Assembly (NCBI RefSeq): GCF_035594765.1
Contig: NC_085846.1
Location: forward strand, 119,027,190-119,091,189
Length of the DNA: 64,000 nt
Source: Anolis carolinensis
Lineage: Eukaryota
Reading direction: 5' to 3'
Positions within the stretch are counted from its first letter, which is position 1. Each line of letters opens with the position of its first letter. The position numbers and the translations under genes are program-made. The notes under the pieces are model-generated. The model saw only the letters and a list, made by a program, of their open reading frames with translations. It was not told the origin of the DNA and made no database searches. Shown here one piece after another: positions 2,671 through 63,840 of this stretch.

Positions 2671-2989
2671 CTTCTCTGTTCTTCCGGCGACTGCGCTTCC
2701 TCTGGCTCCGGCCTCTTGTCTTGTCTGCCGAGGGAAGGAGGCAGAGGAGGGGTCGCTTTGACTTTTCTCCCCCCCTCAAATAACCCTCTCAAGAAGACGG
2801 ATTGGTTCTCAGTCGTGGTCTGGCTTGGCTTTTCCATTGGCTGCAGAGGAGTTGCCCGGTGAAAGTGAAACTGGTTTGCCTTGATAAGCTGGCTGGCTCC
2901 CTCCCTTTGCCCAGAGAAGCTTCAGCTGGAGGCGAGGGCGGGCTGGGGCAGAAGGAGCTCCTGGCAGCAGCACCAGCACCGGAACCCAG
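2671..2989. promoter_or_regulatory. Putative bidirectional promoter with non-coding first exons: + exon 1 of gene A (donor cag|GTGAGT at 2990) and - exon 1 of a probable GIMAP outside the window (donor aag|GTATGA at 2670)
   Basis: Consensus ISRE GAAAGTGAAACT at 2861-2872; inverted CCAAT at 2801 and 2836; GATA site at 2882. Both exon ends are homologous to those at 59357 and 59754. Confidence 0.62.
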
Positions 2990-3552: not shown

Positions 3553-4937
3553 GCAGCATCAAAGTGTGGCTGCTTCCTGTCTGGGGGGAATCCTTTGTTG
3601 GGAGGTGTTAGCCGGCCCTGATTGTATCCTGTCTGGAATTCCCCTGTTTTGCGTGTTGTTCTTTATTTACTGTCCTGATGTGGACAAATTGTGGACAATT
3701 TCAACAGAAAGGAGGAAACCATGAAAAGGAACACAATCTGGCTCGTAGTATTTAAAAACTCCAAAATCAGGACAGTAAATAAAGAACAACACTTTGGAAA
3801 CAGGGGAATGCCAGGCAGGAAACAATCAGGGCCTGAGGCTGTTAGGAACGGCAGGAGATGGAGTCCAAAACACCTGGAGCGAGGGCTGAGGTTTGCCCAT
3901 GCCTAGACATTTACATGAATCTGTGAGCAACAAGATTCCTCCCTTACTCCCCATATTGCTCATATGCCGAGTGTTTTTATGTGTATATATATACCCGGGC
4001 TTATGTGTATAGGCCCGGGCTGTGGCGCAGGTGGGAGAGCAAGCCAGTGCAATTAACTGCAATGAATCACTCTGACCAGGAGGTCATGAGTTCGAGCCCC
4101 GCTTGGAGCCTATGTTTGTTTGTCTTTGTTCTATGTTAAAAGGCATTGAATGTGTATGTGTAATGTATTTGCCCTGAGTCCCCTTCGGGGTGAGAAAGAA
4201 GGGCGGAATATAAATGCTGTAAATAAATAAATAAATAAATAAATAAATATACACACACGTATCCATATAGATATACAGGCAGTCCCAAAGTTATGAACAT
4301 TTGTATGTAAGTTGGAACAGGTACATTTTTGAAGTGCAACTTTAGCCAAATATATATTTAGCTCTGGGTCGCATAGGGAAAGTCAACACCCCAGTGGGGT
4401 TTGTTTTGCTGCAGTTGAGTCTGCATCATATGAGTTCTTCACTGACCATTATAAAGCAGTTCCAACTGCATAGATGGGGCCCGTCACCCTTTTGAGAAAC
4501 CCCGTGTCCTCTGCCATAGAAGAAAGGAACTGGTAGCCGTGCACAGGACAGGGGCCACCGGGGTCTCAAGGGAAGGTACTTTCCTGTGGCCGGTGAACTT
4601 GAACTCCTGTTATTTCCTGTCTTTGTTTGGCCTTTTGTTGCCCTGCCGCTGCCCGCATTGAGATCCCAACCCAGCGGCTGAGCTACAGCTAAACAACATC
4701 TGGCTCTGTTATCGGACTCGGCTACATCCGCTGACCAGTGAGCCCAGGTGTTCCTAAAGGCAAATTCTGCACCTGGAACACATTGGATGGCGTTCACGAC
4801 CTGCATGTGATTTTCATGACTTGTTTTTATTGTTATTATCTGTTTTATTGCTTTGTTTTATTGTTGTGGATTGGGCTTGGCCCCATGTAAGCTGCTCTGA
4901 GTCCCTTCGGGGAGAGGGGGCGGGGTATAAAAATAAA

Positions 4938-4990
<53 letters not shown>

Positions 4991-6563
4991 GCTGCCCAGA
5001 AGGGATAGTCTGCACCTCACGCGCTGCACCAGGCCTTCTTTTGGAGCTTCTCCAAGGCTGAGGAGAACCTCCTTTTAGAACCGTGGTTTTTTGTTTATCC
5101 GTTCAGTCTCTTCCGCCTCTTGGTGACCCCTGGACCAGCCCAGGCCAGAGCTCCCTGTCGGCAGCCGTGTCCACCCGTAGCTCCTTCAAGGTGGAGCCAC
5201 TCCCTTCAAGGACCTCATCCATCCATAGGTTACTATGGGAAATACCATTGCTTTCATTATGTGGACCTTGGTTGCTGGTGTGATGTTTCTACCCTTCACT
5301 CTTTTATCGAGATTGGTCATTGCTCTCCTCCCAAGTAGAAAATGTCTTCTGATTTCCTGGCTACAGTCTGCGCCTGCAGTCACCTTTATTTGACCGGGAA
5401 CCACTTTGACCCGGGACCACTCTCCAACCTTAGTACCAAAAGGGTTACGAATCAGTTTTTGGTCAAGTTTAGATTTGGTTTGGTTATTTTGGGGACTGAT
5501 TCAGAAAAGTGCATTGGAGAGACCACATCCGCTCTAGTTTCCGATGCAGAACATATGCCACCCAGCAGTAGCCATTTGCTCACCCACAGAAAACCATATT
5601 TAGTAATTTGGAGCTGATGTGTTCTATCCAATGCAATTTTCTGAATCAGCTCCCCAAATAACCCCAGGATCAGGCCTAAAAACGAAGACTATTGAGTAAA
5701 CACAGATGTCTGTTCTAAACAATGTAATGAACTATATAACACAATAGTGGTTCCACACATAAGTAGTACACAATATGTATATTAGAGCATCATATACATA
5801 TAACATACACAGAAACAATACTCAGTCCTAAGTATCTAACTCAGTATTATAAATCAAACAAAATGATATAAGTCTCTGCAGTCCTAAAAGGTTTGGATTG
5901 GCTAAAAGGCAAACTGATTCAGAGTCTCTGCAGTTCTGGAGGGATTCCTCAGGACTCCACAGGTTTTGGATCAATAGTGAAGCCAAGTAGACAGAGTCAA
6001 TGCTGATGTAACTCCTGAGTAGGTGGTATTATATCCGTTCACACCATTTGCACGCCGTTTACAACTGGTTCCTGGGTTTTATCCCAGTTTCGGTAACCCT
6101 TCTTCTAGTAAGCGGCAAAAGCTGTATTATTTCTTTATTGATGGCTCTGCATCAGGTATTCTTAATTATGTTAGCAGTATCAATATGCTGCTGTGGATTT
6201 TGTGGTGCGAGCCAGCCTCTCCCCTCCCGACATCCCCGTTGCCTGGCTACTAAGAGAAGGTTTCGAGAGACCACTTGCTCTCGTTGCAATGGTGTAGTAA
6301 CGGTGAGGCCGCAAGCCATATTTTAGTTCTTGGGGACCACTGGTGGTCCACTGACCACAGGTTGGGGACCACTGTTGTAGAAGAAGCAGCGTTACTTCTC
6401 AGGTGGGAATTTGTGTAGCTGGGGCTTGTAGCTGAATGAAAAGCCAAACTGCTTTGCCTCCAGCCATTCCGCCCTTCCTTTTCAAAGCTGATTTCCTCTT
6501 TTCTTTCTGTTTCAGATTTAGAAATCCTGAGCCCTGAAATTTGTCTCATCGTCGCTTTAAGAT

Positions 6564-9031
6564 ATGGCTGAATGGAATGAAGGTGAGAATTTAATGACTA
6601 AGGCTCGGGCCCCGTTACACCGCCACATCAAATCCATATGGTCTGCTTTGAACTGGGCTATATGACAGTGTAGATTCATATCATCCAGTTCAAAGCAGAT
6701 AATCTGGGATCAGATACTGGATTATATGGCCGTGTAGATGGGGCATACACTGTACCCAATCAAGCTTATCTTTATTGTCTAGCAAAATGTGTCCATTGTA
6801 CCTGTTTCTTATGAGACGTTCCTCACAAAGGAAGCAAACCCTGAGTGGGTTGTTGTATGTCTTTCGGGCTGTGTGGCCATGTTCCAGAAGCATTCTCTCC
6901 TGACGTTTCGCACACATCTATGGCAGGCATCCTCAGAGGTTCTGAGGCATGGAGAAACTAGGCAAGGAAGGTAAATATATATCTGTGGAGAGTCCAGGGT
7001 GTGACAAGAGTCCTTTGTCAGTTGGAAGCCAGCCCTAATGTTTCAGTTAATCACCCTAATTAGCATTGGAAAGGTTGGTCTCTTGCCTGGGGGGCATCCT
7101 TTGTTCAGAGTCATTAGCCGTCCTTGGGGCTCCCCTGCCCTCAGAGTGTTGCTTCTTATTTACTGTTCTGATTTTGGAGTTTTTTAATACTTTAGCCAGA
7201 TTTTGTTCATTTTCATGGTTTCCTCCTTTCTGTTGAAGTTGTCCACATGCTTGTGGATTTCAATGGCTTCTCTGTGTAGTCTGACATGATAGTTGTTGGA
7301 GTGTTCAAGCATTTCTGTGTCCTCAAATAATATCCTGTGTCCAGGTTGGTTCCTCAAGGGCTCTGCTCTGGCTGATTTCTCTGGTTGAGTGAGTCTGCAA
7401 TGCCTTGCATGTTCTTTGACTCGTGTTTGGGCAATGCTACGTTTGCTGGTCCCTATGTAGACTGAGCCCTGAGTGGCTCAGCAAAGCCACAGTTCTGCAC
7501 ATGGAGCCATGCAGCCCTTGGACTTGCTGTGGAGCTTCTCAAGCCCTTCCCTGCCCCATAGCGGAGTGGGGCTGCGTCCCAGAGGCGGGTGAAATGGTCT
7601 GCCAGGGTTCTCCATAGTTCATGGCAGAAGATTTAAGGAGTCACATCTCCAATGGACTCTCTCTATTTGGAACGAGGTCTTGCTTGTGAGGATTTGGAGC
7701 TGGGACCCTGGTGTAGACCTTCTGCTGAGAGAGGTCTTTCGTTCATGCATCTCAGTCCCTCCCGTTCTGCCCCACCTGCCCCAGCGCAAGGAGGGGGAGC
7801 TCCAAGGGAAAGGCAAGAACAGGAAGGAGAAGAGAGCTCACCTTCGGCCTGGGGGGTGGGAGGTGGGGAGGGGGTGGCCAGGCAGAGCCCCCAAGATACC
7901 TTTATTCCAGCAGAATCACCTCTTGCTTTGCCCCCTTGCTTCATGGGTTCTGGTTAGCAACAATGGGTCATAGAATCATAGGGTTGGGAGAGACCTCACA
8001 GGCCATCCAGTCTAACCCCATTCTGCCAAGAAGCAGGAAAATCACATTCAAAGCACCCTCAACAGATGGCCATCCAGCCTCTGCTTAAAAGCCTCCAAAG
8101 AAGGAGCCTCCACCACACTCTGCAGCAGAGAGTTCCACTGCTGAACATCTCTCTCTCACAGTGGGGAAGTTCTCCCTCATGTTCAGGTGGAATCTCCTTT
8201 CCTGAAGTTTGAAGCCATTGTTCCATTGTGTCCTAGTCTGCAGATTAGTCAAAGCGAGTTCCCCTTGCATGACCGCTTCTTCTCTTGTTCCCCTCCCTTG
8301 TTTTAGACACGGAACTGAGGATTGTCCTCGTGGGGAAAACCGGTGCCGGGAAGAGCGCCGCGGGAAACACCATCCTGGGACAGGAGAAATTTATGTCTAC
8401 CGTGTCACCCACATCAACAACAAAAACATGCGAAAAGAAGGAGACTGTAATTGATGGGAGGAAAATTGTGGTTGTTGACACTCCTGGGTTTTTTGAAATC
8501 AATGCAAAAACAGAAGAAGTTTCCAAAGAAGTTGAGAAGTGTGTAAAATGGTGCTACCCAGGCCCACATGCAATTATACAGGTCATGCAAGTGGCCCGTT
8601 TCACTCAGGAGGAAAAAATGGTTGCTCAGGTAATCCAAGATATTTTCAGCTTTGAGGCCAAGGATTACATGATCATATTGTTCACCCGCAAAGAAGACCT
8701 AAAAGAAAAGACTTTGGAAACATTCTTAAGTGAAGGAGATGCCTCTTTTCAGGAGCAGATTGAGAAATGTGGGGGCCGTTACCTGGCTTTCAACAACAGG
8801 GCTGAAGGTCTGAAGAGGGAGGAGCAGGTGAAGGAGCTGCTTGGCATGATCGATGACATGCTGGAGAAGAACATCAAGGCCCCCCATTACACTGAAAAGA
8901 TGCTCGTCAGCGACCAAAAACGGATAGAAGATTATCAACGTCTGCAAAGAGAGAACAGAGAGCTGAGGAGGGAGAAAGAAGAGAATGAAAAACGGTTAGA
9001 AGGGAACAAAAGCTGGTGCAACATACTCTAA
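6564..9031 (+). CDS. GIMAP family GTPase (GIMAP4/7-like, gene A); CDS join(6564..6582,8307..9031), 247 aa, short coiled coil, C-terminal CaaX (CNIL)
   Basis: AIG1-type G domain: G1 GKTGAGKS, G3 DTPG, PGPHA box followed by VARFT, G4 TRKED, AFNN. Upstream exon 6516-6582 (ttcag| ... ATG GCT GAA TGG AAT GAA G|gtgag) splices in phase 1 to ttttag|AC at 8307, giving [16 protein letters not shown]. The paralog at 62030-63840 has the same exon layout. Confidence 0.92.
6849..7466 (-). mobile_element. 5'-truncated Penelope-like element (GIY-YIG endonuclease end plus pLTR)
   Basis: The - strand encodes ...[16 protein letters not shown]...REAIEIHKH...NFNRKEE; flanked by the direct repeat CCCTGAGTGG; contains a hammerhead motif. 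Confidence 0.8.
6899..6939 (-). ncRNA. Minimal Penelope-type hammerhead ribozyme motif
   Basis: ccu CUGAGGA ugccugccauagaugugugc GAAA c GUC agg: conserved core, 3-bp stem I, minimal stem III. Confidence 0.6.
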
Positions 9032-9185
9032 TAGATGCAGCCAAGTTGCCTTTTAAACAAAATCCAAAACACAGCTTGGTGATTCTTTTATCAGGCACAA
9101 GCCACAACAGTATCACCCAAATTTATCTCCACGTAAGAGTGTGTGCAAGGGGCACAACCGTCTTAAGCCACTTTACGTCCCTGTA

Positions 9186-9216
<31 letters not shown>

Positions 9217-24870: not shown

Positions 24871-26034
24871 TTATAGCCAATGTGTTGCCACCACTGTTGC
24901 TCTTATTGCAACTAAGGTTGCATTGTAGAATTAATGCCGCTTTGTACTTCTTTCATTGCTTTTGCTCAACACTATGGAATCCTGGGAGCTGTAGTTCTAT
25001 GAGGTCTTCAGCCTTCTCTGCAAAAGAGTGCAGCGCCTCACCAAACCACAACTCCCAAGATTCCATAGAACTGAGTCATGGTCGGCAAAGGGGTGTCAAA
25101 CTGCATTAATTTTACAGCGCAGATGTACCCTATGAGAAACAACAAGCTTAGAAAGAGCCTGAGCTGTTTACTGAGTTGTTTTGGAAAGAAGATAATGTAT
25201 GTTGATTACCTTTCGCCAAATGAATGATCAGTACAACCAAGCCAATGACTAAAGCACAGCCACCAAAAAAACAAAGCCCTTTTTTCAGCCAAGTTCTCTC
25301 CAAATTCCAACCTCCCCTTGGCTTTGGCCTGGTACCTCCATTCTCTGCCATGAACGCTTGAATCTTTTCATCTGTCAAGACCGGCTCCAAGTAGAGCCTA
25401 TTGGAGTAATGCCTCCCTCCCTCCTTCTCCACCATGCGCTGGACTATCTCCATCAGCTCAGAGACCTGCCTCTCCCGTTCCTCCCCAGATGCCCTGTTAT
25501 TGAAAGCACACATGCTTCCGAATTAGCCCATGGAGAGCCTTATTATCTGAGCCCCACACATAGTTCTCCAAGGAATCCCCCCCTAAATCCTCCTTGCGGG
25601 TGAAGAGGATGACCATGTGCCTGGAGGCCCATTCCCCAAACACAACCCGGACTTGATTTGCTGCATCCTGGTCTTCTGCCGTGAAGCGGCCCACCTGGGT
25701 CACAAACACCAAGGCATGAGGGCCGGGCCTGGAGAGGTCAATGCAGCGCCTGATCTCCGGCAGCAGGATCGTACTGGGTGTGTCTGGGTCACAAAGGGCT
25801 GGAGTGTCAATCACAGAAAGGTCCAAGTCTCTCCACCTCTGTGTCTCTCGTTGGCACCTGAGCGTGGTCGTCCTCAGTGCCGCCACGGACTCAAACGCCT
25901 TCCGGCCAAGAAGGGTGTTTCCTGTAGCGCTCTTCCCGCCTCCGGTCTTTCCAACAAGGATAATCCTGAGTTCAGATTCCTCCCTTCCGGGGCCTGAAGA
26001 ACAAATCAGTGAAAAAAGAGTCAGAGTTGATCTT

Positions 26035-26520
26035 CCTGGGCTGTAGCACAGCTGGTTAATCACCAGCAGAAATAGATCACTGCTGACCGGAAGGTGGCAA
26101 GTTCGAAGCCTGATTTGGATTGAGCACCCAACTACCAATAGCCTAGCTTGCTGTCCACCTAAGCAGTTCGAAAACAGCTGAGCTGTGAGTAAATAAATTA
26201 GGGACAGCTTAAGCAGGGAGATTAACTTAATTTATAACAAGATAAAACTGCCAGCGATCAAAGAGCGATAAGGAAACACTGTGCTCAAAATGGACTCGGT
26301 GTCATAGTAGATGAAGCGACAGTTCCCCCTGTGGCCGGAATCGAGCATAACCTCCATAAGCCAAAGTTGGAAAATGTTGAATTACCTCTATCTGTCTGTA
26401 TGTGTAGTATGTCTAAAAACGGCATTGAATGTTTGCCGTGTATATGTGCATTGTGATCCACCCTGTGTCCCCTTTGAGGTGAGAAAGAAGGGCAGAATAT
26501 AAATACTGTAAATAAATAAA
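26035..26520 (+). mobile_element. tRNA-derived SINE with (AAAT)n tail; duplicate at ~53972-54457, relative at ~4015-4245
   Basis: gggctgtagcacagctggt box A-like and gttcgaagcc box B-like motifs; shared 3' tail. Confidence 0.6.
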
Positions 26521-33049: not shown

Positions 33050-34699
33050 GCCTTGAAAGCACACAACAACAGACTTGCTTCCTTCACAGGACAAATGGGA
33101 ACATTCTTAATGTGGATGGAGAACACATTTTGCACAGAAGGTCTTGGAGGAAAGGTTTCTGCACAACAGTGTTTTCTGCACATAAAATGCTACGTTAGCC
33201 ATGTACTCAAGTCTCCATGTGTGTTGTACGGCCAGGCTCTTTTGTGCAAAGCCTTCTGTCCACTTGCGCTCTACAGACACCTCTGTGCAAAACATGGAGC
33301 CAAGGAGGGACACAACCTATGGCCTCGGTATCATGGTTTCTCTCCCAAGTTTTGGTTGGCCCCTTTGGGATGTCCAAGCCGGTGTGTGTGTGGTGTGTGG
33401 TGTGATTGGGAAGGGTATTCTGGTATATGCATGGCACGCACCATGTTTACAAGGATTGGGGCATCTGGTTGTGTTTCTCTGCCAACTGGTTTCTTCTGTG
33501 CAGGATCGATAAGGCCCAGCTGGGAGGTGGCCCCACTTTCTGAAAGAAGAGGGCTTGGCCACATTGAAAATAAATTATCTCTTTTTCTGAAAAGAGCCCT
33601 AACTATTTCCTTTCTCACAGACAAGGGGGAGTTTCTCTTCTCCTTTCTGGGAAATGCCGTGACTGTAGAGAAAGAGAAAGCACCACTGCTTTAGGACCAG
33701 GGCCAAGGCAAACAGCACCTTCTCAGTGTATCCCCTGCTGTGTTTGCTGTGGGCACATTGGGACAAGCAAAAGATTTCAACAGCAAAAGAGATTCAAAGA
33801 TGGGCTTCAAGCCATCCTTAAAAATGTGGAACACACACCGAGAGAGAACTGGGAAGCCCTGGCCTTGGAGCGTTGGGCCTGGAGGCCAGCTGGGACCAAC
33901 AGTGAGGTTGATTTTAAAGAGGCAAAAATGGAGGACAAAGGGAGAAATGTGCCAGGAGGAAGGTGTGCCAAGCAAACCCTTGCCGCGACTGACTTCCTTC
34001 TGAAAATGTATGTTCTCACTGCGAAATAAAGACCACGAGGATCCAAAACAGGTCTGTCTCTACAGTCACTTGCGGACCCACCACCCAGACTTTACCCCTA
34101 GAAGACAATCAGACCCATGGGTCACCAGTTGTAGCCTATGATGATATGAAGACGGGCACATTGGGGAACATACCCCACCCCATGCCCCATTCCCATTTTA
34201 AAATATGCTTCAATTTCCCATTTCCCCCTTTTCTTTGTTGGAACACACTCAGAAGGCCATTCTCTGCTCAAAATCGGACAAGATGACAGTATGGGCCAGA
34301 ATAGGGCTCACGCGGTAAACAGACATAAAGCCAAGGGAGAAGTGTGACTAATAGCAAGGAACCTGGGCCAGGATTACACCACTTCAACCTCCTGTATAGC
34401 TATCAGGTAGAACAAATACAAGTCAACACCATATCAAAATCAGAAGGAGAAGATAAAGTGCAGAATAGGAGTCATGTAGTGGCCAAGGTGGTTACAGAGG
34501 AATCACTTCCAGAAGCCAATTTAGACCACCAAGTTACCATTTCTAGGGCTTACAAATACAAGAAAATATTTTGTAAGATGTCTAGGGCTTCAGGTTAGTC
34601 ATTTCCAAAAACCTGTTGGAACCACCAAGTTTTCAAGTCCCTACGAAATGATGTTATTGATGGAGCTAATTGATGGAGCTAATCTTATCTCTTTGGGTA

Positions 34700-37744: not shown

Positions 37745-38719
37745 ATGAGAAGAGCTGTTCAGCAGTGGAACTCTCTGCCTCAGAGTCCAGAGGAAGCTCC
37801 TTTTTTAAAATTAATTATTTGGCACAAACAGTTGAATATACAGTCAGAAAATATACATTCAAAAATAATGAAATGTGTCTAGTAGGCTTGATCGATCCAT
37901 GAAAAATTTGATTCTAAACTCGTTTCAAAACTAGAGGGGGCAGTTTTTCGTTTTTGTTGCTAATAACGAATTTGGCCCCCAAAATTTTTCGAAATTAACG
38001 AAAATTCGTTATTTTCGAAATTAATTCGTTAATGGCGGACGCGCATGCGCGGTGGCCCAAAAACAGCCCGAAGGGGGGGGACTTAGGGGGCTCTCCCGCC
38101 CTCATTTTTTGAGTGATCTTCTTCAAACTTGGTACAGTGGTAGAACACATTTAACACTGATAGCTCACCAAAATGTGGAACGTTTCCCTTATCCTCTGAT
38201 TTTTGGCAAATTTCCATAGCTTTTATAATAAACCATTTTTTAATAATTGCAGAAATCTGTTCCTTGTTTGAAAGTCTTATTTCCTGTTAAATTGGGTTGT
38301 CTTTACTGTGAAAGTCATTGCTCTACTTCAGAAACTTTGTTTTTGTGGCTGAAACTTTGTTAAATTGGTGTAGTCCCTGCATATGTGTGTGTGTTACTGT
38401 ATTTACAAATTAACCCCCAAATATCATGATGTATTGAAAACATTGACTACAAAAATGCGTTGGATAATCCAGAACATTGGATAAGCGAGTGTTGGATAAG
38501 TGAGACTCTACTGTATATTGTTTTTGCATGGCAGAATGGCGTTGGACTGGATGGTCTCTTCTAGCTTTATGATTCTATGATGTTTGGTGCCATGTTTCTA
38601 TGATTCTATCATTTTGTTGTCGAGCAATTTAGAACAGTATTGGATACCTGTAACTGTTTCTTTGAGTGGTGTTCTGTGGAAACACAACCCGCCCATCCTC
38701 CCCGCTGATTTCATGAAAA

Positions 38720-40745
38720 GAAAAGAAAAGAAAGAAAAAGCCACATCCGGCCAGGCCCACACACTGAAATACTAGGCCGGCCACCGTTGGCCGGCACGCT
38801 TCCCTGACAGGAAGAAAGAGGGGCCGCCGCCCCAAAGAAGGCTTCTGTGCAAGATTGCACAAAGGGGTAAAGAACGACAGCCGCGAGAGAAGAGAGAGGC
38901 GGTGCATCGTGGGAAACACGTCGACCACGTAGGCCGACAAGGCCCACACGTTGAAATACTAGGCCGGCCACCGTTGGCCGGCACGCTTCCCTGTGAGGAA
39001 GAAAGAGGGGCCGCCGCCCCAAAGGAGGCTTCTGTGCAAAATCGCATAAAGGGGTAAAGAACGACAGCCGTGAAAGAAGAGGAAAGGGAAGCGGTGCATA
39101 GTGGGAAACATGTCCACCACGTAGGCCAAAAAGGCCCACACTTTAAAATACTGCCACCGTTGGCCGGCACGCTTCCCTGTGAGGAAGAAAGAGGGGCCGC
39201 CGCCCCAAAGGAGGCTTCTGTGCAAAATCGCACAAAGGGGTAAAGAACGACAGCCGGCGAGAGAAGAGAGATGCGGTGCATCGTGGGAAACTCGACCACG
39301 TAGGCCGAGAGGCAGCAAAAAGAAAAGAAAAGAAAAGAAAAGAAAGAAAAAAGCCACAGGCGACAAGGCCCATACATTAAGCTGGGCCGGCCACTGTTTG
39401 CCGGCACGCATCCCTGAGAGAGAGAGAGAGAGAAAAAACCAGAGGACACAGCCCCAAAGGAGGCTTCTGTGCAAAATCGCATAAAGGGCTAAAGAACGAC
39501 AGCCGCGAGAGAAGAGAGATGCGGTGCATCGGGGGAAACACGTCGACCACGTAGGCCGACAAGGCCCATACTTTTAAATACTAGGCCGGCCACCGTTGGC
39601 CGGCACGCTTCCCAGACAGGAAGTAAGAGGGGCCGCCGCCCCAAAGGAGGCTTCGGTGCAAACTCGCTCAAAGGGCTAAAGAACGACAGCCGCGAGAGAA
39701 GAGGAAAGGGAAGCGGTGAGTAGTGGGAAACACGTCGACCACGTAGGCCGAGAGGCAGCAAAAACAAAAGAAAAGAAATAAAAAGCCACAGGCGACAAGG
39801 CCCATACTTTAAGCCGGGCCGGCCACAGTTTGCCGGCACGCATCCCCGGGAGAGAGAAAAAAACAGAGGACACCGCCCCAAAGGAGGCTTCGGTGCAAAC
39901 TCGCATAAAGGGGTAAAGAACGACAGCCGCGAGAGAAGAGAGAGGCGGTGCATCGGGGGAAACTCGGCCACGTAGGCCGAGAGGCAGCAAAGACCAAAGA
40001 AAAGACAGAAGAAGCCACGGCCAAAAAGGCCCACACTTTAAAATACTAGGCCGGCCACCGTTGGCCGGCACGCTTCCCAGACAGGAAGAAAGAGGGGCCG
40101 CCGCCCCAAAGGAGGCTTCGGTGCAAACTCGCATAAAGGGGTAAAGAACGACAGCCGGCGAGAGAAGAGAGAGGCGGTGCATCGGGGGAAACTCGGCCAC
40201 GTAGGCCGAGAGGCAGCAAAGACCAAAGAAAAGACAGAAAAAGCCACGGCCGAAAAGGCCCACACTTTAAAATACTAGGCCGGCCACCGTTGGCCGGCAC
40301 GCTTCCCAGACAGGAAGAAAGAGGGGCCGCCGCCCCAAAGGAGGCTTCGGTGCAAACTCGCATAAAGGGGTAAAGAACGACAGCCGGCGAGAGAAGAGAG
40401 ATGCGGTGCATCGGGGGAAACTCGGCCACGTAGGCCGAGAGGCAGCAAAGACCAAAGAAAAGACAGAAGAAGCCACGGCCGAAAAGGCCCACACTTCAAA
40501 ATACTAGGCCGGCCACCGTTGGCCGGCACGCTTCCCAGACAGGAAGAAAGAGGGGCCGCCGCCCCAAAGGAGGCTTCGGTGCAAACTCGCATAAAGGGGT
40601 AAAGAACGACAGCCAGCGAGAGAAGAGAGAGGCGGTGCATCGGGGGAAACTCGGCCACGTAGTCCGAGAGGCAGCAAAGACCAAAGAAAAGACAGAAGAA
40701 GCCACGGCCAAAAAGGCCCACACTTTAAAATACTAGGCCGGCCAC
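38720..40745. repeat. Imperfect GC-rich tandem array (~185-235 bp unit; 229 bp in the homogeneous right part) inside the hAT element
   Basis: The motif aaatactaggccggccaccgttggccggc recurs at ~38768, 38954, 39577, 40041, 40270, 40499 and 40728, with variant units in between. Confidence 0.9.
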
Positions 40746-41248
40746 CGTTGGCCGGCCCCACGCCCACACCGCTGAACCCACAGGGGGAAGGGCATGCTTT
40801 CTTAACGTCTGCTTTCGAAATGTGGGCCCAAGCCCCTCAGACCCGGGGGGCCGGCCACCGTTGGCCGGCCCCACGCCCACACCGCTGAACCCACAGGGGG
40901 AAGGGCATGCTTTCTTAACGTCTGCTTTCGAAATGTGGGCCCAAGCCCCTCAGACCCGGGGGGCCGGCCACCGTTGGCCGGCCCCACGCCCACACCGCTG
41001 AACCCACAGGGGGAAGGGCATGCTTTCTTAACGTCTGCTTTCGAAATGTGGGCCCAAGCCCCTCTGACCCGGGGGGCCGGCCACCGTTGGCCGGCCCCAC
41101 GCCCACACCGCTGAACCCACAGGGGGAAGGGCATGCTTTCTTAACGTCTGCTTTCGAAATGTGGGCCCAAGCCCCTCAGACCCGGGGGGCCGGCCACCGT
41201 TGGCCGGCCCCACGCCCACACCGCTGAACCCACAGGGGGAAGGGCATG
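40737..41248. repeat. 113-bp tandem repeat, ~4.5 copies, inside the hAT element
   Basis: Near-identical units starting at 40737, 40850, 40963, 41076 and 41189. Confidence 0.92.
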
Positions 41249-44937: not shown

Positions 44938-45124
44938 GACAAGGGGAGTGTTTTCAGGTAACAGAAGGGATGATGGTAAGGTGTTGTGTTACTGGTGGGA
45001 AATATTTGTTGAATCTTGATTGGCAACGTGTTATATTCTGGCCAATTAACTGTCGCAAAAGCGCAGTCTATAACATTTAGTTAGTTTTATTTGTTTTCAA
45101 GGGGATACCTGTACTTTCCAGTTC

Positions 45125-46282
45125 TACAGGGAAGTATGGGATATGCAACTCTTTCCCAAACTTGGCTTAGGATTATCAGGAAGCGTCCCCGGCTGAGACA
45201 CAAGCAGCCCCGCTTGTGTTTGAGACTGGGGAAGGGACAAAGGCACCCCCCCCTTCTTTCCCCAAAAGGAGTTGTATTTGGTACAGGGAAGTATGGGATA
45301 TGCAAGTCTTTCCCAAACTTGGCTTAGGATTATCAGGAAGCGTCCCCGGCTGAGACACAAGCAGCCCCGCTTGTGTTTGAGAGCGGTGAAGGGACAAAGG
45401 CACCCCCCTTCTTTCCCCAAAAGGAGTTGTATTTTGTACAGGGAAGTATGGGATATGCAACTCTTTCCCAAACTTGGCTTAGGATTATCAGGAAGCGTCC
45501 CCGGCTGAGACACAAGCAGCCCCGCTTGTGTTTGAGAGCGGTGAAGGGACAAAGGCACCCCCCCTTCTTTCCCCAAAAGGAGTTGTATTTTGTACAGGGA
45601 AGTATGGGATATGCAACTCTTTCCCAAACTTGGCTTAGGATTATCAGGAAGCGTCCCCGGCTGAGACACAAGCAGCCCCGCTTGTGTTTGAGAGCGGTGA
45701 AGGGACAAAGGCACCCCCTTCTTTCCCCAAAAGGAGTTGTATTTTGTACAGGGAAGTATGGGATATGCAAGTCTTTCCCAAACTTGGCTTAGGATTATCA
45801 GGAAGCGTCCCTGGCTGAGACACAAGCAGCCCCGCTTGTGTTTGAGACTGGGGAAGGGACAAAGGCACCCCCCCTTCTTTCCCCAAAAGGAGTTGTATTT
45901 TGTACAGGGAAGTATGGGATATGCAACTCTTTCCCAAACTTGGCTTAGGATTATCAGGAAGCGTCCCCGGCTGAGACACAAGCAGCCCCGCTTGTGTTTG
46001 AGAGCGGTGAAGGGACAAAGGCACCCCCCCTTCTTTCCCCAAAAGGAGTTGTATTTTGTACAGGGAAGTATGGGATATGCAACTCTTTCCCAAACTTGGC
46101 TTAGGATTATCAGGAAGCGTCCCCGGCTGAGACACAAGCAGCCCCGCTTGTGTTTGAGAGCGCTGAAGGGACAAAGGCACCCCCTTCTTTCCCCAAAAGG
46201 AGTTGTATTTTGTACAGGGAAGTATGGGATATGCAACTCTTTCCCAAACTTGGCTTAGGATTATCAGGAAGCGTCCCTGGCT
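45125..46282. repeat. 154-157-bp tandem repeat, ~7.5 copies, upstream of the transposase
   Basis: tacagggaagtatgggatatgcaa recurs at 45125, 45282, 45437, 45593, 45747, 45903, 46059 and 46213. Confidence 0.93.
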
Positions 46283-53073: not shown

Positions 53074-56000
53074 TTAGAAAGAGCCTGAGCTGTTTACTGA
53101 GTTGTTTTGGAAAGAAGATAATGTATGTTGATTACCTTTCGCCAAATGAATGATTAGTACAACCAAGCCAATGGCGAAAGCACAAACACCAAAAGTAAAC
53201 AGCCCTTTTTTCAGCCACGGTCTTCCCAAATTCCAACCTCCCCTTGGCTTTGGCCTGGTACCTCCATTCTCTGCCATGAACGCTCGAATCTTTTCATCTG
53301 TCAAGACCGGCTCCAAGTAGAGCCTATTGGAGAGATGCCTCCCTCCCTCCTCCACCACCATTCGCTGGACTATCTCCATCAACTCAGAGACCTGCCTCTC
53401 CCGTTCCTCCCCAGATGCCCTGTTATTGAAAGCACACATGCGCCGCCCACACTTCCGAATTAGCCCCTGGAGAGCCTTATTATCTGAGCCCCACACATAG
53501 TTTTCCAAGGAATCCCCCCCTAAATCCTCCTTGCGGGTGAAGAGGATGACCATGTGCCTGGAGGCCCATTCCCCAAACACAACCCGGACTTGATTTGCTG
53601 CATCCTGGTCTTCTGCCGTGAAGCGGCCCACCTGGGTCACAAACACCAAGGCATGAGGGCCGGGCCTGGAGAGGTCAATGCAGCGCCTGATCTCCGGCAG
53701 CAGGATCGTACTGGGTGTGTCTGGGTCACAAAGGGCTGGAGTGTCGATCACAGAAAGGTCCAAGTCTCTCCACCTCTGTGTCTCTCGTTGGCACCTGAGC
53801 GTGGTCGTCCTCAGTGCCGCCACGGACTCAAACGCCTTCCGGCCAAGAAGGGTGTTTCCTGTAGCGCTCTTCCCGCCTCCGGTCTTTCCAACAAGGACAA
53901 TCCTGAGTTCAGATTCCTCCCTTCCGGGGCCTGAAGAACAAATCAGTGAAAAAAGAGTCAGAGTTGATCTTCCTGGGCTGTAGCACAGCTGGTTAATCAC
54001 CAGCAGAAATAGATCACTGCTGACCGGAAGGTGGCAAGTTCGAAGCCTGATTTGGATTGAGCACCCAACTACCAATAGCCTAGCTTGCTGTCCACCTAAG
54101 CAGTTCGAAAACAGCTGAGCTGTGAGTAAATAAATTAGGGACAGCTTAAGCAGGGAGATTAACTTAATTTATAACAAGATAAAACTGCCAGCGATCAAAG
54201 AGCGATAAGGAAACACTGTGCTCAAAATGGACTCGGTGTCATAGTAGATGAAGCGACAGTTCCCCCTGTGGCCGGAATCGAGCATAACCTCCATAAGCCA
54301 AAGTTGGAAAATGTTGAATTACCTCTATCTGTCTGTATGTGTAGTATGTCTAAAAACGGCATTCAATGTTTGCTGTGTATATGTGCATTGTGATCCACCC
54401 TGTGTCCCCTTTGAGGTGAGAAAGAAGGGCAGAATATAAATACTGTAAATAAATAAATTCCTGCTGGAATGCAACAAGGTTCTAGACAAGAAGAATGCAA
54501 GAGTGGCTCACAGTAGCAGTGGGAAAATAGGAGATAGTATTTAGCTTTTTAGAGTAAGCTGAACCTCTTCTTTCTTATGGAAAACTGTCCAGCTCCTCTC
54601 TGAGACGGAGACGGATATCTTGACCCAACTCCTTCTCATTCCGCTCCTGTTCTTGACTTTCCCTCACAACCTCCTGTAATGAAGTGTGGTTTTTTTTAGT
54701 TTACAGATGCCATGTTTAATTGTGTTTTAAAAGGGTTAATATTTCAGTTACTCTGCACTCATGAGTTGGTTCCCATGGAGAAGTGGGAGGAGCCAACCAT
54801 TCTTTTGCTGGAGGAGTGTAGTTTTGAAAAAGCAGCCGTTAGTCTATGCCCTGAGGAGGTGCAGTTAAGACTGATCCTCAGTGAAGGGATCAGGGAGGCT
54901 CAAATGTTTGATTTTGAGTCAGTTTAAAATATGTTTGGTGACTTATTTTAAGTTAGTCTGTGCCCTGCTGAGGTACAGTTAAGACTGATTCTCAGTTGGA
55001 GGATCAGGGAGGCTCAAATGTTTGATTTTGAGTCAGTGTAAAATAACTTTTGTGACTTATTTTAAGGTAATCTGTCTCTTGATAAGCAACAGACAGTCTG
55101 TGATTGAAATTCACAGGGTGATTGCAGTTTAAAGCAGTAGAGTAGGAAGTGACATTTTAAGAAGTTTGAAACACCTCAATATAGCTTTGCAACTGTTAAT
55201 CTAAGTGCCTCTAAAGAGAAGTTACTGTAACCATTAAGCTTGTGCCTGAATAAACGTGTTATTGTTCTTCCTAACATCTCAGCTTCTGTCATCTATATTA
55301 CCATCAAAAAGAAAACAAGAAAGAAGAAAAATAAAATTTAAAAAGTCTCCTCTCTAAGTAGCTAGTAGCTATATCTTCCAATAGTGGTGGCAAGAGTTGA
55401 TAATCCCCTTAACATCTGGTGGCAGCATTTAAATAAAAAACATCTTTAATAAGTGGTGGCAGTGGATATAAAATATATAATAATAATATAAATAAAATAT
55501 AATTAATAAAACAACCTCCACATCCACATCTCCGAAATTGGTGTCAGAGTTGGGATTTAAAAAAGAGTCCCCCTGCCTGAGTTCTCCTCAAATTGGTGGC
55601 AGTGGTGGGATTTTAAAAAGATTTCCCCTCTGCCTGACATCTTTGCACCTCCTTTGGATGTAGGCAGACTAGAACAGGACCCAGTAAACATTCCTTCCAG
55701 ACAATGGAGTTCTCGCAATAAAGATTACCGTAGTTCTCTAATGAAAGTGTGCTTTGCCCCTTTAATGCCCATCTCACACCCACACAATTGCCAAATCTAT
55801 TCGCTTGGCTAACAGATCCTTAAGAATCTGAGAACTATTTTATGATGATGGGGGGTGTCAACATGAGCAGTTTTCCCATCTGTAGGTTAATTCCTACAAA
55901 ACCACGGAAACACAGAATACTGGGGCCTCCGTGGCCAAGCCTGCTCACTTCTGGATTCAGGGGACTATTCCACCGCAATGAATCCATGCAATGCAACCTC

Positions 56001-62029: not shown

Positions 62030-63840
62030 ATGGCCGCATTCAGTACAGGTAAGAGTTTAATGAGCTGATTAAATTATACCAAATCAAGCCCATCTTATTG
62101 TTCTAGCAAAAATAATACTGCATATTGCAGAGGATTGCTTTCAGCTGGCACCAAAATTATGGAGGAATTGAACTGTGTTAGACAGATTGCCAACCACTAA
62201 CACCAATATATGGAGGATTCAAACTCGTTACCACTACTAACACTGCCACCAATGTTATAGTCAGGAGCCTCCTCTGTGTTAGGATATTTAGAGAGTCACA
62301 GGAGATACTTTATGTGAGGAAAAAACAAGAAGTCGTGTATTTGTTCTTAAACAGTAAAGATGTGTTGCAGTTTCAATAACAGGTTAGGCTTTTCTCTTAC
62401 AAAGGATGGTTTTATAACTTGAATTCTGTGGAAATATGTTCCTTCACACAGGGAATACAAACAGGATAATTTAAACCTTTAAATCCACTTCTCCTGGGAT
62501 TTAACACCAGCACTCTAAACTATAGAGTCTCAATATAGTTCTCAGCCTTTCTTCCCTGAAGGCTTTTAACTATATTCCTCAAAGAAGTATCTCTCTAATA
62601 ACACAGTTCCCAAAAGTATCTCTATCTTCACACTTCAAACACCAACCATCCAACTTCCGAACTGACTGAATAATTCTTCTGGCTGCATAGCTCCAACTGT
62701 CACTTTGGCTCCGCCCATCTCCAGTTGCTAAGCATCTCTCCCCATTTACATCAGCCAATCAGACTGCACTTTCAGTAATGACTGCCTAATTGCTCCTCCC
62801 CCTTGCTCTGCTTAGCTTTTGCAAGCAAGGCCTGAAGCTACCTGTACACCAACCTTGTAAGGTAGGCTTATCTCTTACACATATCTATTATGTCCTAGGT
62901 ACATTTTAGCTAATTACCGCTCCCTCCCAAGTTTGCCATTCTGGGGCTATTGCACTATTGGTTGGGGAATCTGGAGCATGGCTGGTGGTTCACGGGTGGG
63001 GTTGAAGGGGTGGTGGGAAATGACACTTCTATTGTGATGGTTGAATTTTGTAGATCGTATGCTTTTTTCACATAACATAATAAACATTTAATTACAAAAA
63101 AAAATGAAAACAGCAAAGTTCCCCTTGTATAACAGTTTCTTCTATTGTTGTTCCATTTCCTTGTTTTAGCCCCTGAATTGAGGATCGTCCTCGTGGGAAA
63201 AACTGGAGTTGGGAAAAGTGCCACAGGAAACACCATCCTGGGACAGAAGCTCTTTAAATCTATTGCATCGCCCAGCTCAGTGACAAGTACATGCGGAAGG
63301 GAGGAAACTGTCATCGATGGTAGAAAAATTGTGGTTGTTGATACTCCTGGGTTTTTCGACACCAATTCAACAACCAAAGAAACTATCAAAGAAGTGAAAA
63401 AGTGTGCAAGCCTTTGCAGTCCAGGTCCACATGTGATTATACATGTCATGCAATTGGCTCCTTTCACGAAGGAGGAAAAAGAAGTAGCTAAATTAATCCA
63501 AGATGTTTTTAGCCTTAAAGCAAAGGCTTATGGAATCGTTCTGTTCACCCGTAAAGAGGGTTTGGGAGGAAGGTCTTTGAAAGAGTTCTTAGAGGACGGA
63601 GATGAATCTCTTCGGGAGCATGTGGCCAAATGTGCGGGTGGGTGCCTGGCCTTCAACAACACGGCTGAAGGTCGGGAGAGGGAAGAGCAGGTCAATGAGC
63701 TGCTTGGCATGATAGATGCCTTGGTGAAGAAGAACGACAAGGCCCCTTGCTACACTGAGGACATGCTAGCCAGGGACCAAATCACCATGAGTAAGATCCA
63801 AAATATTTTAAGACGGAACGATTGTTGCAACATACTCTAA
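62030..63840 (+). CDS. GIMAP family GTPase (gene B); CDS join(62030..62048,63170..63840), 229 aa, ends CCNIL
   Basis: G1 [21 protein letters not shown]. Exon 61980-62048 (tttcag| ... ATG GCC GCA TTC AGT ACA G|gtaag) joins ttttag|CC at 63170 in phase 1. Clearly paralogous to gene A in exons and 3' flank. Confidence 0.92.
62277..62878. mobile_element. Probable solo LTR in intron 2 of gene B
   Basis: TGTTAGGATA...TATCTCTTACA inverted termini; no clear TSD found. Confidence 0.4.

What the first reader, a model, noticed from the sequence alone, without database searches (positions are those of the whole stretch)
8990..9031. GIMAP ending in a geranylgeranylation-type CaaX box (CNIL), as in human GBP2
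Seen: gene A ends KSWCNIL-stop and gene B ends NDCCNIL-stop; the tetrapeptide is conserved although the preceding tails differ in length and sequence. Known: CaaX with terminal Leu is a GGTase-I substrate; human GBP2 ends in CNIL; characterised human GIMAPs use TM helices or no anchor. Inference: prenylated, probably interferon-inducible GIMAPs that converge on the GBP membrane-targeting strategy.
Basis: partly seen in the sequence, partly recalled or inferred. Interest (0 to 1): 0.78.

Follow-up and report, generated by a model that had tools for sequence, protein, structure and literature searches.

The report
Lipid-anchor tail on reptile GIMAP GTPases
Two immune-type GTPase (GIMAP) genes of a green-anole-like lizard really end in the lipid-anchor signal CNIL; the signal is shared by most reptile and bird relatives and many fish ones but not by mammalian ones, and I found no paper describing it.

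Summary
Gene A (CDS 6564-6582 + 8307-9031) ends KSWCNIL-stop. Gene B (62030-62048 + 63170-63840) ends NDCCNIL-stop. Both are AIG1/GIMAP GTPases by Pfam, PDB sequence search and an AF2 model that matches GIMAP7 and GIMAP2.

The A/B pair alone is weak evidence, because their 3' ends, UTR included, are recent paralogous copies. The strong evidence is comparative:
- Cys sits at position -4 in 139 of 215 labelled non-mammalian relatives, against 3.3% or less at neighbouring positions.
- The a2 residue is aliphatic in 136 of 140 boxes, and X is mostly Leu.
- On trees built from the G domain only, genes A and B lie in a well-supported squamate + turtle + tuatara + bird clade that is about 85% CaaX-terminated.
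- Ray-finned fishes also have many CaaX GIMAPs. The 25 sampled mammalian proteins have no credible one.

CNIL alone was shown in human cells to direct prenylation-dependent, GGTI-sensitive membrane targeting (PMC2998424).

Best reading: an old clade of geranylgeranylated GIMAPs, anchored to membrane at the end of a long C-terminal helix.

Interferon inducibility is untested; ISRE motifs are not enriched. No paper in the library describes a vertebrate CaaX GIMAP. An earlier follow-up of this scan on this same window (s1-570500) had already noted the reptile-and-bird class. I rate it a new variant of a known kind, of moderate interest.

The parts
6564..6582 (+). Gene A, ATG exon (MAEWNE plus the first base of a split Asp codon); GT donor at 6583-6584.
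   Evidence: Sequence read and exact position. A spliced contig of run X1 joins 6335-6580 to 8305-8480 with GT..AG ends. The N-terminus MAEWNEDTELR equals that of the A. carolinensis model P0001.
8307..9031 (+). Gene A, main coding exon (AIG1 G domain, helical tail, CaaX box, stop). The full protein is 247 aa.
   Evidence: AG acceptor at 8305-8306; Pfam AIG1 E 6.7e-67; PDB GIMAP2/4/7 E 1e-48 to 4e-46; AF2 pLDDT 90.1 with best Foldseek matches GIMAP7 and GIMAP2.
8333..8356 (+). Gene A P-loop (G1), GKTGAGKS.
   Evidence: G3 DTPG, G4 RKED, G5 AFNN and the conserved box [16 protein letters not shown] are also present.
8894..9016 (+). Gene A, one long C-terminal helix (residues 196-236 of the exon-2 product) that carries the CaaX box at its end.
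   Evidence: DSSP on the AF2 model gives H196-236; block pLDDT is 91-96 along the helix and drops to 68 in the last block, which holds CNIL.
9017..9028 (+). Gene A CaaX box: Cys-Asn-Ile-Leu (Cys244 of the full protein). The stop codon is 9029-9031.
   Evidence: None of the listed differences (the best-supported ones) from the four runs laid on the stretch falls in 9017-9031. Cys is invariant in all 52 aligned CaaX-clade proteins.
9032..9215 (+). Gene A 3' UTR, up to a putative AATAAA at 9210-9215 (inferred). An (AAT)n run starts near 9177.
   Evidence: Contigs of X2, X5 and X7 run from the coding part through the stop; those of X5 and X7 reach 9175 and X2's ends at 9045. The region is homologous to the stretch after gene B's stop. 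The poly(A) site is not shown.
62030..62048 (+). Gene B, ATG exon (MAAFST plus a split codon); GT donor at 62049-62050. Inferred by homology with gene A's ATG exon.
   Evidence: blastn pairs 6458-6597 with 61918-62063. The sequence shows the same layout, a cag acceptor, 'a[tc]tagaaatcctgag' and a 19-nt coding part followed by GTAAG. No RNA evidence was obtained.
63170..63840 (+). Gene B, main coding exon. The full protein would be 229 aa. G4 reads RKEG (Asp to Gly) and the Arg-finger position is Pro.
   Evidence: AG acceptor at 63168-63169; Pfam AIG1 E 5.8e-64; 62-63% identical to gene A; motif readout.
63826..63837 (+). Gene B CaaX box Cys-Asn-Ile-Leu, preceded by a second Cys (CCNIL). The stop codon is 63838-63840.
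53074..54075 (-). Context: neighbouring GIMAP with a hydrophobic tail-anchor segment instead of a CaaX box (GIMAP1/5-like tail).
   Evidence: ORF and translation; Pfam AIG1 E 8.3e-69. In the trees it falls in a separate, starred clade that has no CaaX members.

Best explanation
Genes A and B encode single-domain GIMAP (AIG1) GTPases whose C-terminal CNIL is a working CaaX box. Inferred pathway: cytosolic GGTase-I puts a C20 geranylgeranyl group on the Cys (Cys244 in A). RCE1 then removes Asn-Ile-Leu and ICMT methylates the new C-terminus. The lipid sits at the free end of a helix of about 40 residues in A (a shorter tail in B) and tethers the G domain to the cytosolic face of endomembranes. 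There the protein would undergo the GTP-dependent dimerisation or oligomerisation known for GIMAP2 and GIMAP7. In gene B the adjacent Cys (CCNIL) could add a palmitate as a second signal. The box is inherited, not a lizard invention. A and B belong to a clade of squamate, turtle, tuatara and bird GIMAPs that almost all end in C-a-a-L, or C-a-a-Q in some birds (farnesyl type). Ray-finned fishes have many such tails too, while characterised mammalian GIMAPs have none. Shown here: the sequence, the gene structure, transcription, the fold, conservation and phylogenetic distribution of the box. Inferred: the lipid modification itself, the lipid type, the target membrane and the function.
For: Motif and gene models. 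Family: Pfam AIG1, PDB GIMAP2/4/7/5/1 hits, an AF2 model with pLDDT 90.1 and pTM 0.85 that matches GIMAP7 3zjc and GIMAP2 2xtm. The box lies just after a confident long helix, in a lower-confidence non-helical end, so it should be accessible. Conservation: 82 of the 120 best homologues end in Cxxx. Cys is at -4 in 139 of 215 labelled non-mammals against 3.3% or less at other tail positions; a2 is I/L/V/F/M in 136 of 140; X is L in 95, Q in 16 and F in 10. In the 52-protein alignment Cys is invariant while the residues before it vary and tail length ranges from 11 to 55 residues. Phylogeny from the G domain only: the CaaX state needs 26 changes against 62-78 in shuffles. A sauropsid clade of 130 tips, 110 with CaaX, has support 99, and the same clade is starred (SH-aLRT 99) in the IQ-TREE run. 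Most non-CaaX members of that clade look like point-mutated tails, a missing last residue or alternative isoforms. Experimental precedent: GFP-Gly4-CNIL goes to the Golgi and this is blocked by prenylation inhibitors, GBP2 lacking CNIL is lost from the membrane fraction, and GGTI is the inhibitor used for GBP2 (PMC2998424). Leu-terminated motifs are better GGTase-I than FTase substrates (PMC1847700). Transcription and no splice before the stop: plus the models P0001 and P0002.
Against: No biochemical evidence exists for any GIMAP of this clade; prenylation is predicted from the motif only. The RNA contigs are Logan contigs of runs whose RNA status is a guess. Only run X1 is proven RNA, by one spliced contig, and that contig differs from the window at 3 of 176 exon-2 bases, so it may come from an allele or a near-identical copy. 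Gene B has no RNA evidence, and it lacks the G4 Asp and the Arg finger, so it may be a decaying or non-catalytic copy. The sampled proteins were chosen by similarity to gene A and to a bird CaaX protein, so the percentages are not a census. FTase can also use Leu-terminated boxes, so the lipid type is not certain.
Confidence: 0.82

Rival explanations
1. The conserved C-x-[IL]-L end is kept for a reason other than prenylation. Candidates are a C-terminal peptide ligand (for example a class I PDZ-type S/T-x-hydrophobic end), a redox or metal-binding Cys, or a palmitoylation-only site.
For: a1 is Ser or Thr in 61 of 140 boxes, which would also fit an S/T-x-Leu PDZ-type ligand. No lipidation has been measured.
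Against: The invariant residue is the Cys at -4, which a PDZ ligand does not need, while a1 also takes N, P, V, A and K. The pattern (Cys fixed at exactly -4, a2 aliphatic in 136 of 140, X limited to L/F/I/Q/M/S) is the CaaX rule set. The very tetrapeptide CNIL suffices for prenylation-dependent targeting of GFP.
Confidence: 0.06
2. The box is farnesylated, or prenylated by either enzyme, rather than specifically geranylgeranylated. Alternatively it is only a weak substrate, so most of the protein stays soluble.
For: [quoted passage not shown] Related bird and fish proteins end in C-x-I-Q, a farnesyl-type X. GBP2 lacking CNIL was distributed like the wild type by microscopy in HeLa cells, although it was lost from the membrane fraction, so CNIL gives only modest targeting on its own.
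Against: Leu-terminated motifs are better GGTase-I substrates, and GGTI, not FTI, was the inhibitor used for GBP2 with the same CNIL.
Confidence: 0.1
3. The motif in this window has no present function. Gene B, or both genes, would be decaying copies in a fast-turnover cluster, and the box is there only by descent.
For: A and B share the box and the 3' UTR by recent duplication. Gene B has Gly at the G4 Asp and Pro at the Arg-finger position, which is unique among 52 aligned proteins. The cluster holds a frameshifted TM-type copy and transposons.
Against: Both reading frames are intact. Gene A keeps all G motifs, is transcribed and spliced and is 96% identical to an annotated protein. The box is held across a clade that includes birds, turtles and tuatara.
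Confidence: 0.02

Closest known systems
Human/mouse GIMAP7, GIMAP4 and GIMAP2 (AIG1-type GTPases; structures 3zjc, 3lxx, 2xtm)
   Same: The same family and fold: Pfam AIG1, 36-41% identity to the solved structures, TM-score about 0.75, and G1-G5 plus the conserved box. Gene A keeps the Arg that corresponds to GIMAP2 Arg117. There is one large coding exon after a tiny ATG exon, and the genes sit in a tandem GIMAP cluster beside TM-anchored paralogues.
   Different: Mammalian GIMAPs have either C-terminal TM segments (GIMAP1, 2, 3, 5) or no anchor (4, 6, 7, 8, 9), and none has a prenylation or palmitoylation motif (PMC3804274). The anole proteins end in a CaaX box. In the trees they have no mammalian member in their clade.
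Human GBP2 (also GBP1 and GBP5): interferon-induced dynamin-like GTPases with CaaX boxes
   Same: GBP2 has the identical C-terminal tetrapeptide CNIL, shown to be prenylated and needed for membrane association; GBP1 has CTIS (farnesyl) and GBP5 has CVLL (PMC2998424). The same mix of Leu-type and Gln/Ser-type boxes is seen among GIMAP relatives. Both are immune-associated, oligomerising GTPases with a lipid at the end of a helical extension.
   Different: The GTPase family is unrelated within the P-loop GTPases: no GBP appears among the listed Pfam or sequence hits or the 50 best fold hits. GBPs are about 590 aa with a large helical domain; these are 229-247 aa. Interferon induction is established for GBPs and untested here.
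Arabidopsis AIG1/IAN8, listed among prenylated plant proteins
   Same: An AIG1-family GTPase with a role in immunity that a review lists as prenylated (PMC6866125).
   Different: It is a plant protein and only distantly related. I could not read the cited source, so the basis of the plant claim is unchecked. It does not concern vertebrate GIMAPs.
Ras/Rho small GTPases with CaaL boxes and a second signal
   Same: The logic is the same: a CaaX box plus either upstream basic residues or a nearby Cys. Among 110 clade members, 49 have a net charge of +2 or more in the ten residues before the Cys and 7 have a second Cys. Gene B has CCNIL.
   Different: The G domain family is different (only weak K-Ras matches, E 2e-4). 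The hypervariable linker is replaced here by a long helix.

Membership tests
GIMAP / AIG1 GTPase family (Pfam PF04548) | Significant match to the AIG1 profile over the whole G domain | tested here: met
   Gene A: E 6.7e-67, profile positions 1-208 of 212. Gene B: E 5.8e-64, positions 1-202 of 212.
GIMAP / AIG1 GTPase family (Pfam PF04548) | G1-G5 motifs and the GIMAP conserved box between G3 and G4 | tested here: met
   Gene A has GKTGAGKS, switch-I T, DTPG, RKED, AFNN and [16 protein letters not shown]. Gene B meets all but two: G4 reads RKEG and the box reads QLAPFT.
GIMAP / AIG1 GTPase family (Pfam PF04548) | GIMAP fold: G domain plus C-terminal helical extension | tested here: met
   AF2 model with pLDDT 90.1. 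The best Foldseek matches are GIMAP7 3zjc (E 7e-22, TM 0.76) and GIMAP2 2xtm/2xtp.
GIMAP / AIG1 GTPase family (Pfam PF04548) | GTP binding, hydrolysis and nucleotide-dependent oligomerisation | not testable with these tools
   Needs purified protein.
CaaX prenylation substrates (GGTase-I type) | Cys exactly four residues from the C-terminus of the translated product | tested here: met
   The stop follows directly. Colinear RNA contigs cross the stop, and annotated models end in the same way.
CaaX prenylation substrates (GGTase-I type) | Aliphatic a2 and X = Leu (or Phe) | tested here: met
   CNIL in both genes. In relatives a2 is aliphatic in 136 of 140 boxes and X is Leu in 95 of 140. The rule is cited from PMC1847700.
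CaaX prenylation substrates (GGTase-I type) | Evolutionary conservation of the box against a variable upstream tail | tested here: met
   Cys is invariant in 52 of 52 aligned clade members. Tails range from 11 to 55 residues and the residues at -5 and further upstream vary.
CaaX prenylation substrates (GGTase-I type) | Covalent isoprenoid on the Cys; processing by RCE1 and ICMT; membrane association that depends on the Cys | not testable with these tools
   There is only indirect precedent: the same tetrapeptide works on GFP and on GBP2 in human cells.
Interferon-inducible GTPases (functional class: GBP, IRG, Mx) | Induction by interferon; ISRE or GAS elements in the promoter | tested here: inconclusive
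   GAAANNGAAAST occurs once (2861-2872; 0.54 expected) and GAAANNGAAA seven times (5.15 expected) in 64 kb. One core lies at 6504-6513, but inside the polypyrimidine tract of a splice acceptor. Transcription starts were not mapped and there are no expression data under stimulation.
GBP family (dynamin-like) | GBP-type large G domain and helical domain | tested here: not met
   No GBP appears among the listed Pfam or PDB sequence hits or the 50 best fold hits. The resemblance is limited to the CaaX tail.

The most novel reading that the evidence does not exclude
A lipid-anchored (CaaX) tail is the ancestral state of a major GIMAP lineage of bony vertebrates. It was kept in ray-finned fishes and sauropsids and lost on the mammalian stem. 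Under this reading, mammal-based work has missed a whole mode of GIMAP action, in which these prenylated GIMAPs act with their TM-anchored neighbours as membrane- or pathogen-vacuole-targeted, possibly infection-induced GTPases, functionally parallel to prenylated GBPs.
Probability: 0.2. Interest if true: 0.75.

Novelty: new variant of a known kind. Interest (0 to 1): 0.55.

Why it matters
GIMAPs are important but mechanistically obscure immune GTPases. Current models come from mammals, where membrane binding is by TM tail anchors or is absent, and a primary paper states that no member has a lipidation motif. A large, old, well-conserved clade with a CaaX box in reptiles and birds (chicken 'GIMAP8' included), and many CaaX-ended GIMAPs in fishes, adds a third, reversible and drug-sensitive mode of membrane attachment. 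This gives simple experiments: a Cys-to-Ser mutant, a GGTase-I inhibitor, or statin treatment in chicken or zebrafish cells. It bears on how GIMAP scaffolds assemble on membranes. It also offers a natural parallel to the farnesyl/geranylgeranyl split of GBP1 against GBP2 and GBP5, and it flags a probable loss in mammals.

Tried and rejected
1. Chance or a mis-called frame: rejected.

2. The A/B pair as evidence of selection: set aside, because the box and the UTR are recent paralogous copies.

3. The exhaustive representative search was dominated by multi-domain GIMAP8-like proteins and carries no names. It served only as a tail census (35 of 147 end in Cxxx), and 20 entries were labelled through.

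4. ISRE/IRF scans showed no enrichment, so I make no claim about interferon.

5. Two broad min_terms literature searches were uninformative. Exact pair searches of GIMAP with CaaX, prenylat, geranylgeranyl or farnesyl, and of AIG1 with prenyl, found no paper describing a vertebrate CaaX GIMAP. Subscription journals are not covered.

6. Wang & Li 2009, the source for 'prenylated plant AIG1', is not held.

7. A search for the GIMAP7 arginine-finger paper found nothing useful. That point rests on PMC3804274's remark about GIMAP2 Arg117 and on my own knowledge of Schwefel et al. 2013.

8. A search for a gene-A-like ATG exon for gene B with up to 3 mismatches failed; blastn found it.

9. I did not use the third large protein search. 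No query would bring mammalian or amphibian members into a 120-row list that reptile proteins fill, so absence from mammals rests on 25 sampled proteins, on the lack of any mammal in the clade, and on the published statement.

Orthology to a particular mammalian GIMAP is therefore left open.
Full report
**What is in the sequence.** The window is a GIMAP gene cluster. Its proteins are closest to Anolis carolinensis models (96% and 92% identity). CNIL followed by a stop occurs exactly twice in six frames. One is at 9017-9031 (+), closing ...[10 protein letters not shown]. The other is at 63826-63840 (+), closing ...RRNDCCNIL. Each ends a long open frame that begins with an AIG1 P-loop.

Both products match Pfam AIG1, at E 6.7e-67 and 5.8e-64. 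They also match the solved human GIMAP2, 4, 7, 5 and 1 chains, at E 1e-48 to 2e-42.

**Gene models.**
- A contig of run X1 joins 6335-6580 to 8305-8480 across a GT..AG intron.
- The upstream exon holds ATG GCT GAA TGG AAT GAA G at 6564-6582, followed by GTGAG.
- Joined to the exon that starts at 8307, this gives MAEWNEDTELRIV..., the N-terminus of the Ensembl-derived anole protein P0001.
- Gene A is thus 6564-6582 + 8307-9031 and encodes 247 aa.
- Gene B has the same layout by homology. blastn pairs 6458-6597 with 61918-62063, and the sequence shows a 19-nt coding part at 62030-62048 followed by GTAAG. The main exon is 63170-63840 and the protein would be 229 aa.

**Is the stop really used?**
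- Contigs from four studies lie colinearly over 8824-9175, straight through the stop.
- In X1, the one run proven to be RNA by the spliced contig, contig depth on the exon and 3' UTR is in the hundreds to thousands. The intron contig has a depth of about 7.
- No listed joint has a donor between 8480 and 9031, and no listed difference falls in 9017-9031. Only the best-supported joints and differences are shown.
- Caveats: these are Logan contigs, the other runs may contain DNA, and the spliced contig differs at three exon-2 bases from the window (an allele or a near-identical copy).
- Independent annotation pipelines end the anole proteins, and dozens of orthologues, at the same box.

**Why the A/B comparison is weak but the wider comparison is strong.** A and B are 62-63% identical as proteins. 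Yet the 15 nt encoding CNIL and the stop are identical, the 3' UTRs remain clearly alike, and the tail difference is one in-frame 54-nt indel. The shared box could be plain descent. The wider data remove that doubt:
- 82 of the 120 best homologues of gene A end in C-x-x-X. The endings are CNIL, CSIL, CSLL, CTLL or CPLF in squamates, CSIL in turtles and CVIL in tuatara.
- A search with the last domain of a ptarmigan protein gave 19 of 25 bird proteins ending in CTIL, CSIQ or CVIQ. One of them is chicken 'GIMAP8', XP_015136658.1.
- The same search gave 17 of 38 fish proteins with such an end, from sturgeon, bowfin, gar and many teleosts. Only 1 of 21 mammalian proteins had one, and that single case (CQHR) is not a credible box.
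- Of 147 unnamed representatives from the exhaustive search, 35 end in Cxxx. The 20 that I had named are ray-finned fishes, birds and snakes.
- Over all labelled non-mammalian proteins, Cys is at -4 in 139 of 215. Every other tail position has 0.5-3.3% Cys, and the overall Cys frequency is 2.3%.
- Across the 140 boxes (the mammalian CQHR included), a2 is I/L/V/F/M in 136 and X is Leu in 95, Gln in 16 and Phe in 10.
- These sets were picked by similarity, so the fractions are not a census. The positional contrast does not depend on that.

**Phylogeny.** I cut out the last AIG1 domain of every labelled protein with a home-made HMM, so the tails played no part in the tree.
- On a FastTree of 224 rows, the CaaX state needs 26 changes, against 62-78 in 200 shuffles.
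- Genes A and B lie in a clade of squamates, turtles, tuatara and birds. It has 130 tips, 110 with a box, support 99, and no mammal, crocodilian or amphibian.
- An IQ-TREE run (LG+C20 PMSF, 91 rows) recovers the same clade with SH-aLRT 99 (42 rows, 34 with the box). It also gives a starred fish clade in which 14 of 24 have the box.
- That run separates two groups with no box. One contains proteins ending in W-F-K-K-like tails (crocodilian, turtle, and the last domain of mammalian GIMAP8). The other contains the TM-anchored type, including the window's third gene.
- Most box-less members of the sauropsid clade look like point changes (WLSPFV beside WLCPLF; CSTR beside CSIL), a missing last residue (DCNI), or alternative isoforms with identical domains.
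- The branching order of the sauropsid clade, the fish clade and the W-F-K-K group is unresolved.
- An AU test does not reject holding the fish and sauropsid clades together. That tree is in fact 17.3 log-likelihood units better than the quick free tree, with p-AU 0.82.
- I named the tested group after seeing the tree. The result only means that a single old origin is not excluded.

**Structure and anatomy of the tail.** An AF2 model of gene A, built with 52 aligned clade members, has mean pLDDT 90.1 and pTM 0.85. Its best structural matches are GIMAP7 (3zjc) and GIMAP2 (2xtm, 2xtp), with TM-scores near 0.75.
- After the G domain and helix 167-187 comes one continuous helix, residues 196-236 of the exon-2 product, which ends at the Trp before the box.
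- The four box residues are non-helical, in the only low-confidence block at the end.
- Gene A's tail of 41 residues is long for the clade, where the median is 17 and the range 11-55.
- Among 110 box-bearing clade members, 71 have an aromatic residue within three positions of the Cys, 49 have a net charge of +2 or more in the ten residues before it, and 7 have a second Cys nearby. Gene B is one of the last group (CCNIL).

**How it most likely works.** The tetrapeptide CNIL has been tested directly in human cells.
- GFP carrying only a Gly linker and CNIL goes to the Golgi, and prenylation inhibitors abolish this.
- GBP2 incorporates label from mevalonate.
- GBP2 without CNIL is lost from the membrane fraction.
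- GGTI is the inhibitor that acts on GBP2 (PMC2998424).
- Leu-terminated boxes are better GGTase-I than FTase substrates, although FTase can use them (PMC1847700).

GGTase-I, RCE1 and ICMT are universal in vertebrates (established knowledge). I therefore infer geranylgeranylation of Cys244 (gene A), removal of Asn-Ile-Leu and carboxyl-methylation. This would anchor the G domain peripherally and reversibly to endomembranes through a long helix.

On the membrane, the protein would be expected to undergo the nucleotide-dependent dimerisation described for GIMAP2 and GIMAP7. Gene A keeps the Arg that aligns with GIMAP2 Arg117. PMC3804274 cites that residue as involved in homodimerisation, and to my knowledge it is the catalytic arginine finger of GIMAP7 (Schwefel et al. 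2013, not read here).

Gene B differs in two ways. It has Gly in place of the G4 Asp (LFTRKEGL) and Pro at the Arg position, a combination unique among the 52 aligned proteins. It may therefore be a non-catalytic partner or a decaying copy.

**What is not supported.**
- ISRE-type motifs are not enriched. GAAANNGAAAST occurs once against 0.54 expected, and GAAANNGAAA seven times against 5.15 expected.
- The one core near gene A's ATG exon (6504-6513) lies in the pyrimidine tract of a splice acceptor.
- The promoters were not mapped.
- An earlier follow-up of this scan on this same window (s1-570500) reports an interferon-type element in gene B's shared promoter. I did not verify that. Its statement that the gene belongs to a reptile-and-bird class with a lipid-anchor signal agrees with my independent trees.

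**Comparison with what is known, and novelty.**
- These are members of the GIMAP/AIG1 family; all sequence and fold criteria are met.
- They are not GBPs; only the tail is alike.
- A primary paper states that no mammalian GIMAP has a prenylation or palmitoylation motif (PMC3804274).
- A plant review lists Arabidopsis AIG1 as prenylated (PMC6866125), but its source was not available.
- Full-text searches pairing GIMAP with CaaX, prenylat, geranylgeranyl or farnesyl, and AIG1 with prenyl, found no description of a CaaX box in any vertebrate GIMAP. The PRENbase paper does not mention the family. The library lacks most subscription journals, so this is not proof of novelty.
- The proteins themselves are in public databases under generic 'GIMAP4/7/8/9-like' names.

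I class the finding as a new variant of a known kind: a known GTPase family with a third, lipid-based mode of membrane attachment. That mode is old and widespread outside mammals.

**Limits.**
- Prenylation, lipid type, target membrane and function are all inferred.
- Absence from mammals rests on 25 sampled proteins, on the lack of any mammal in the clade, and on the published statement.
- Amphibians (one sequence) and crocodilians (two) are barely sampled.
- Human GIMAP1-8 could not be put on the tree.

Noticed in passing
window 63170-63840 (gene B): Gene B has Gly instead of the guanine-specificity Asp of G4 (LFTRKEGL against LFTRKEDL) and Pro at the position of the dimer/catalytic Arg (QLAPFT against QVARFT). 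The Pro is unique among 52 aligned clade members, yet the frame and the CaaX box are intact. It may be a non-catalytic, membrane-anchored partner or an early pseudogene.
   Followed up: partly
window 25148-26138 (-) against 53074-54075 (-): A segmental duplication (about 21-31 kb against 49-59 kb, offset about 27.9 kb) carries two copies of a TM-tail GIMAP. The copy at 25148-26138 lacks 11 nt that are present at 53441-53451 of the intact copy, which shifts the frame. There are 24 mismatches in 1112 aligned columns.
   Followed up: partly
relatives P0092, P0108, P0109, P0110, P0302, P0306, P0310, P0315: A third conserved GIMAP tail type: proteins of crocodilians, turtles and a marsupial, and the last domain of mammalian GIMAP8, end in ...W-F-K-K, W-F-G-K or Y-W-F-K. 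Most of them group in the trees, in a clade with no CaaX members. This could be an amphipathic membrane-binding or interaction motif. I know of no description.
   Followed up: no
window 4483-4587 and 61422-61523: An 80% conserved block of about 105 nt lies roughly 2 kb upstream of gene A's ATG exon and 0.5 kb upstream of gene B's. It may be a shared non-coding first exon or a promoter piece. Both ATG exons are preceded by a splice acceptor, so an upstream exon is expected.
   Followed up: no
window 2861-2872, 13254-13263, 14272-14281: The ISRE-like core GAAAGTGAAA occurs three times. The last two lie in a repeated stretch whose frames share the peptide FLGNAVTVEK with 33053-33694, so the motif there seems to be part of a repeat family rather than a promoter.
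   Followed up: no
window 15685-20448 (-) and 42463-44937 (-): There is an intact 1587-aa gag-pol frame of a Gypsy-type retrotransposon and an intact 824-aa hAT-type transposase frame inside the GIMAP cluster. Both were already noted by the scan.
   Followed up: no
window 38600-41200 and 45100-46500: Long arrays of tandem repeats, with a period of roughly 229 nt and roughly 210 nt judging from the repeated ORF translations, flank the hAT transposase.
   Followed up: no
   Followed up: no
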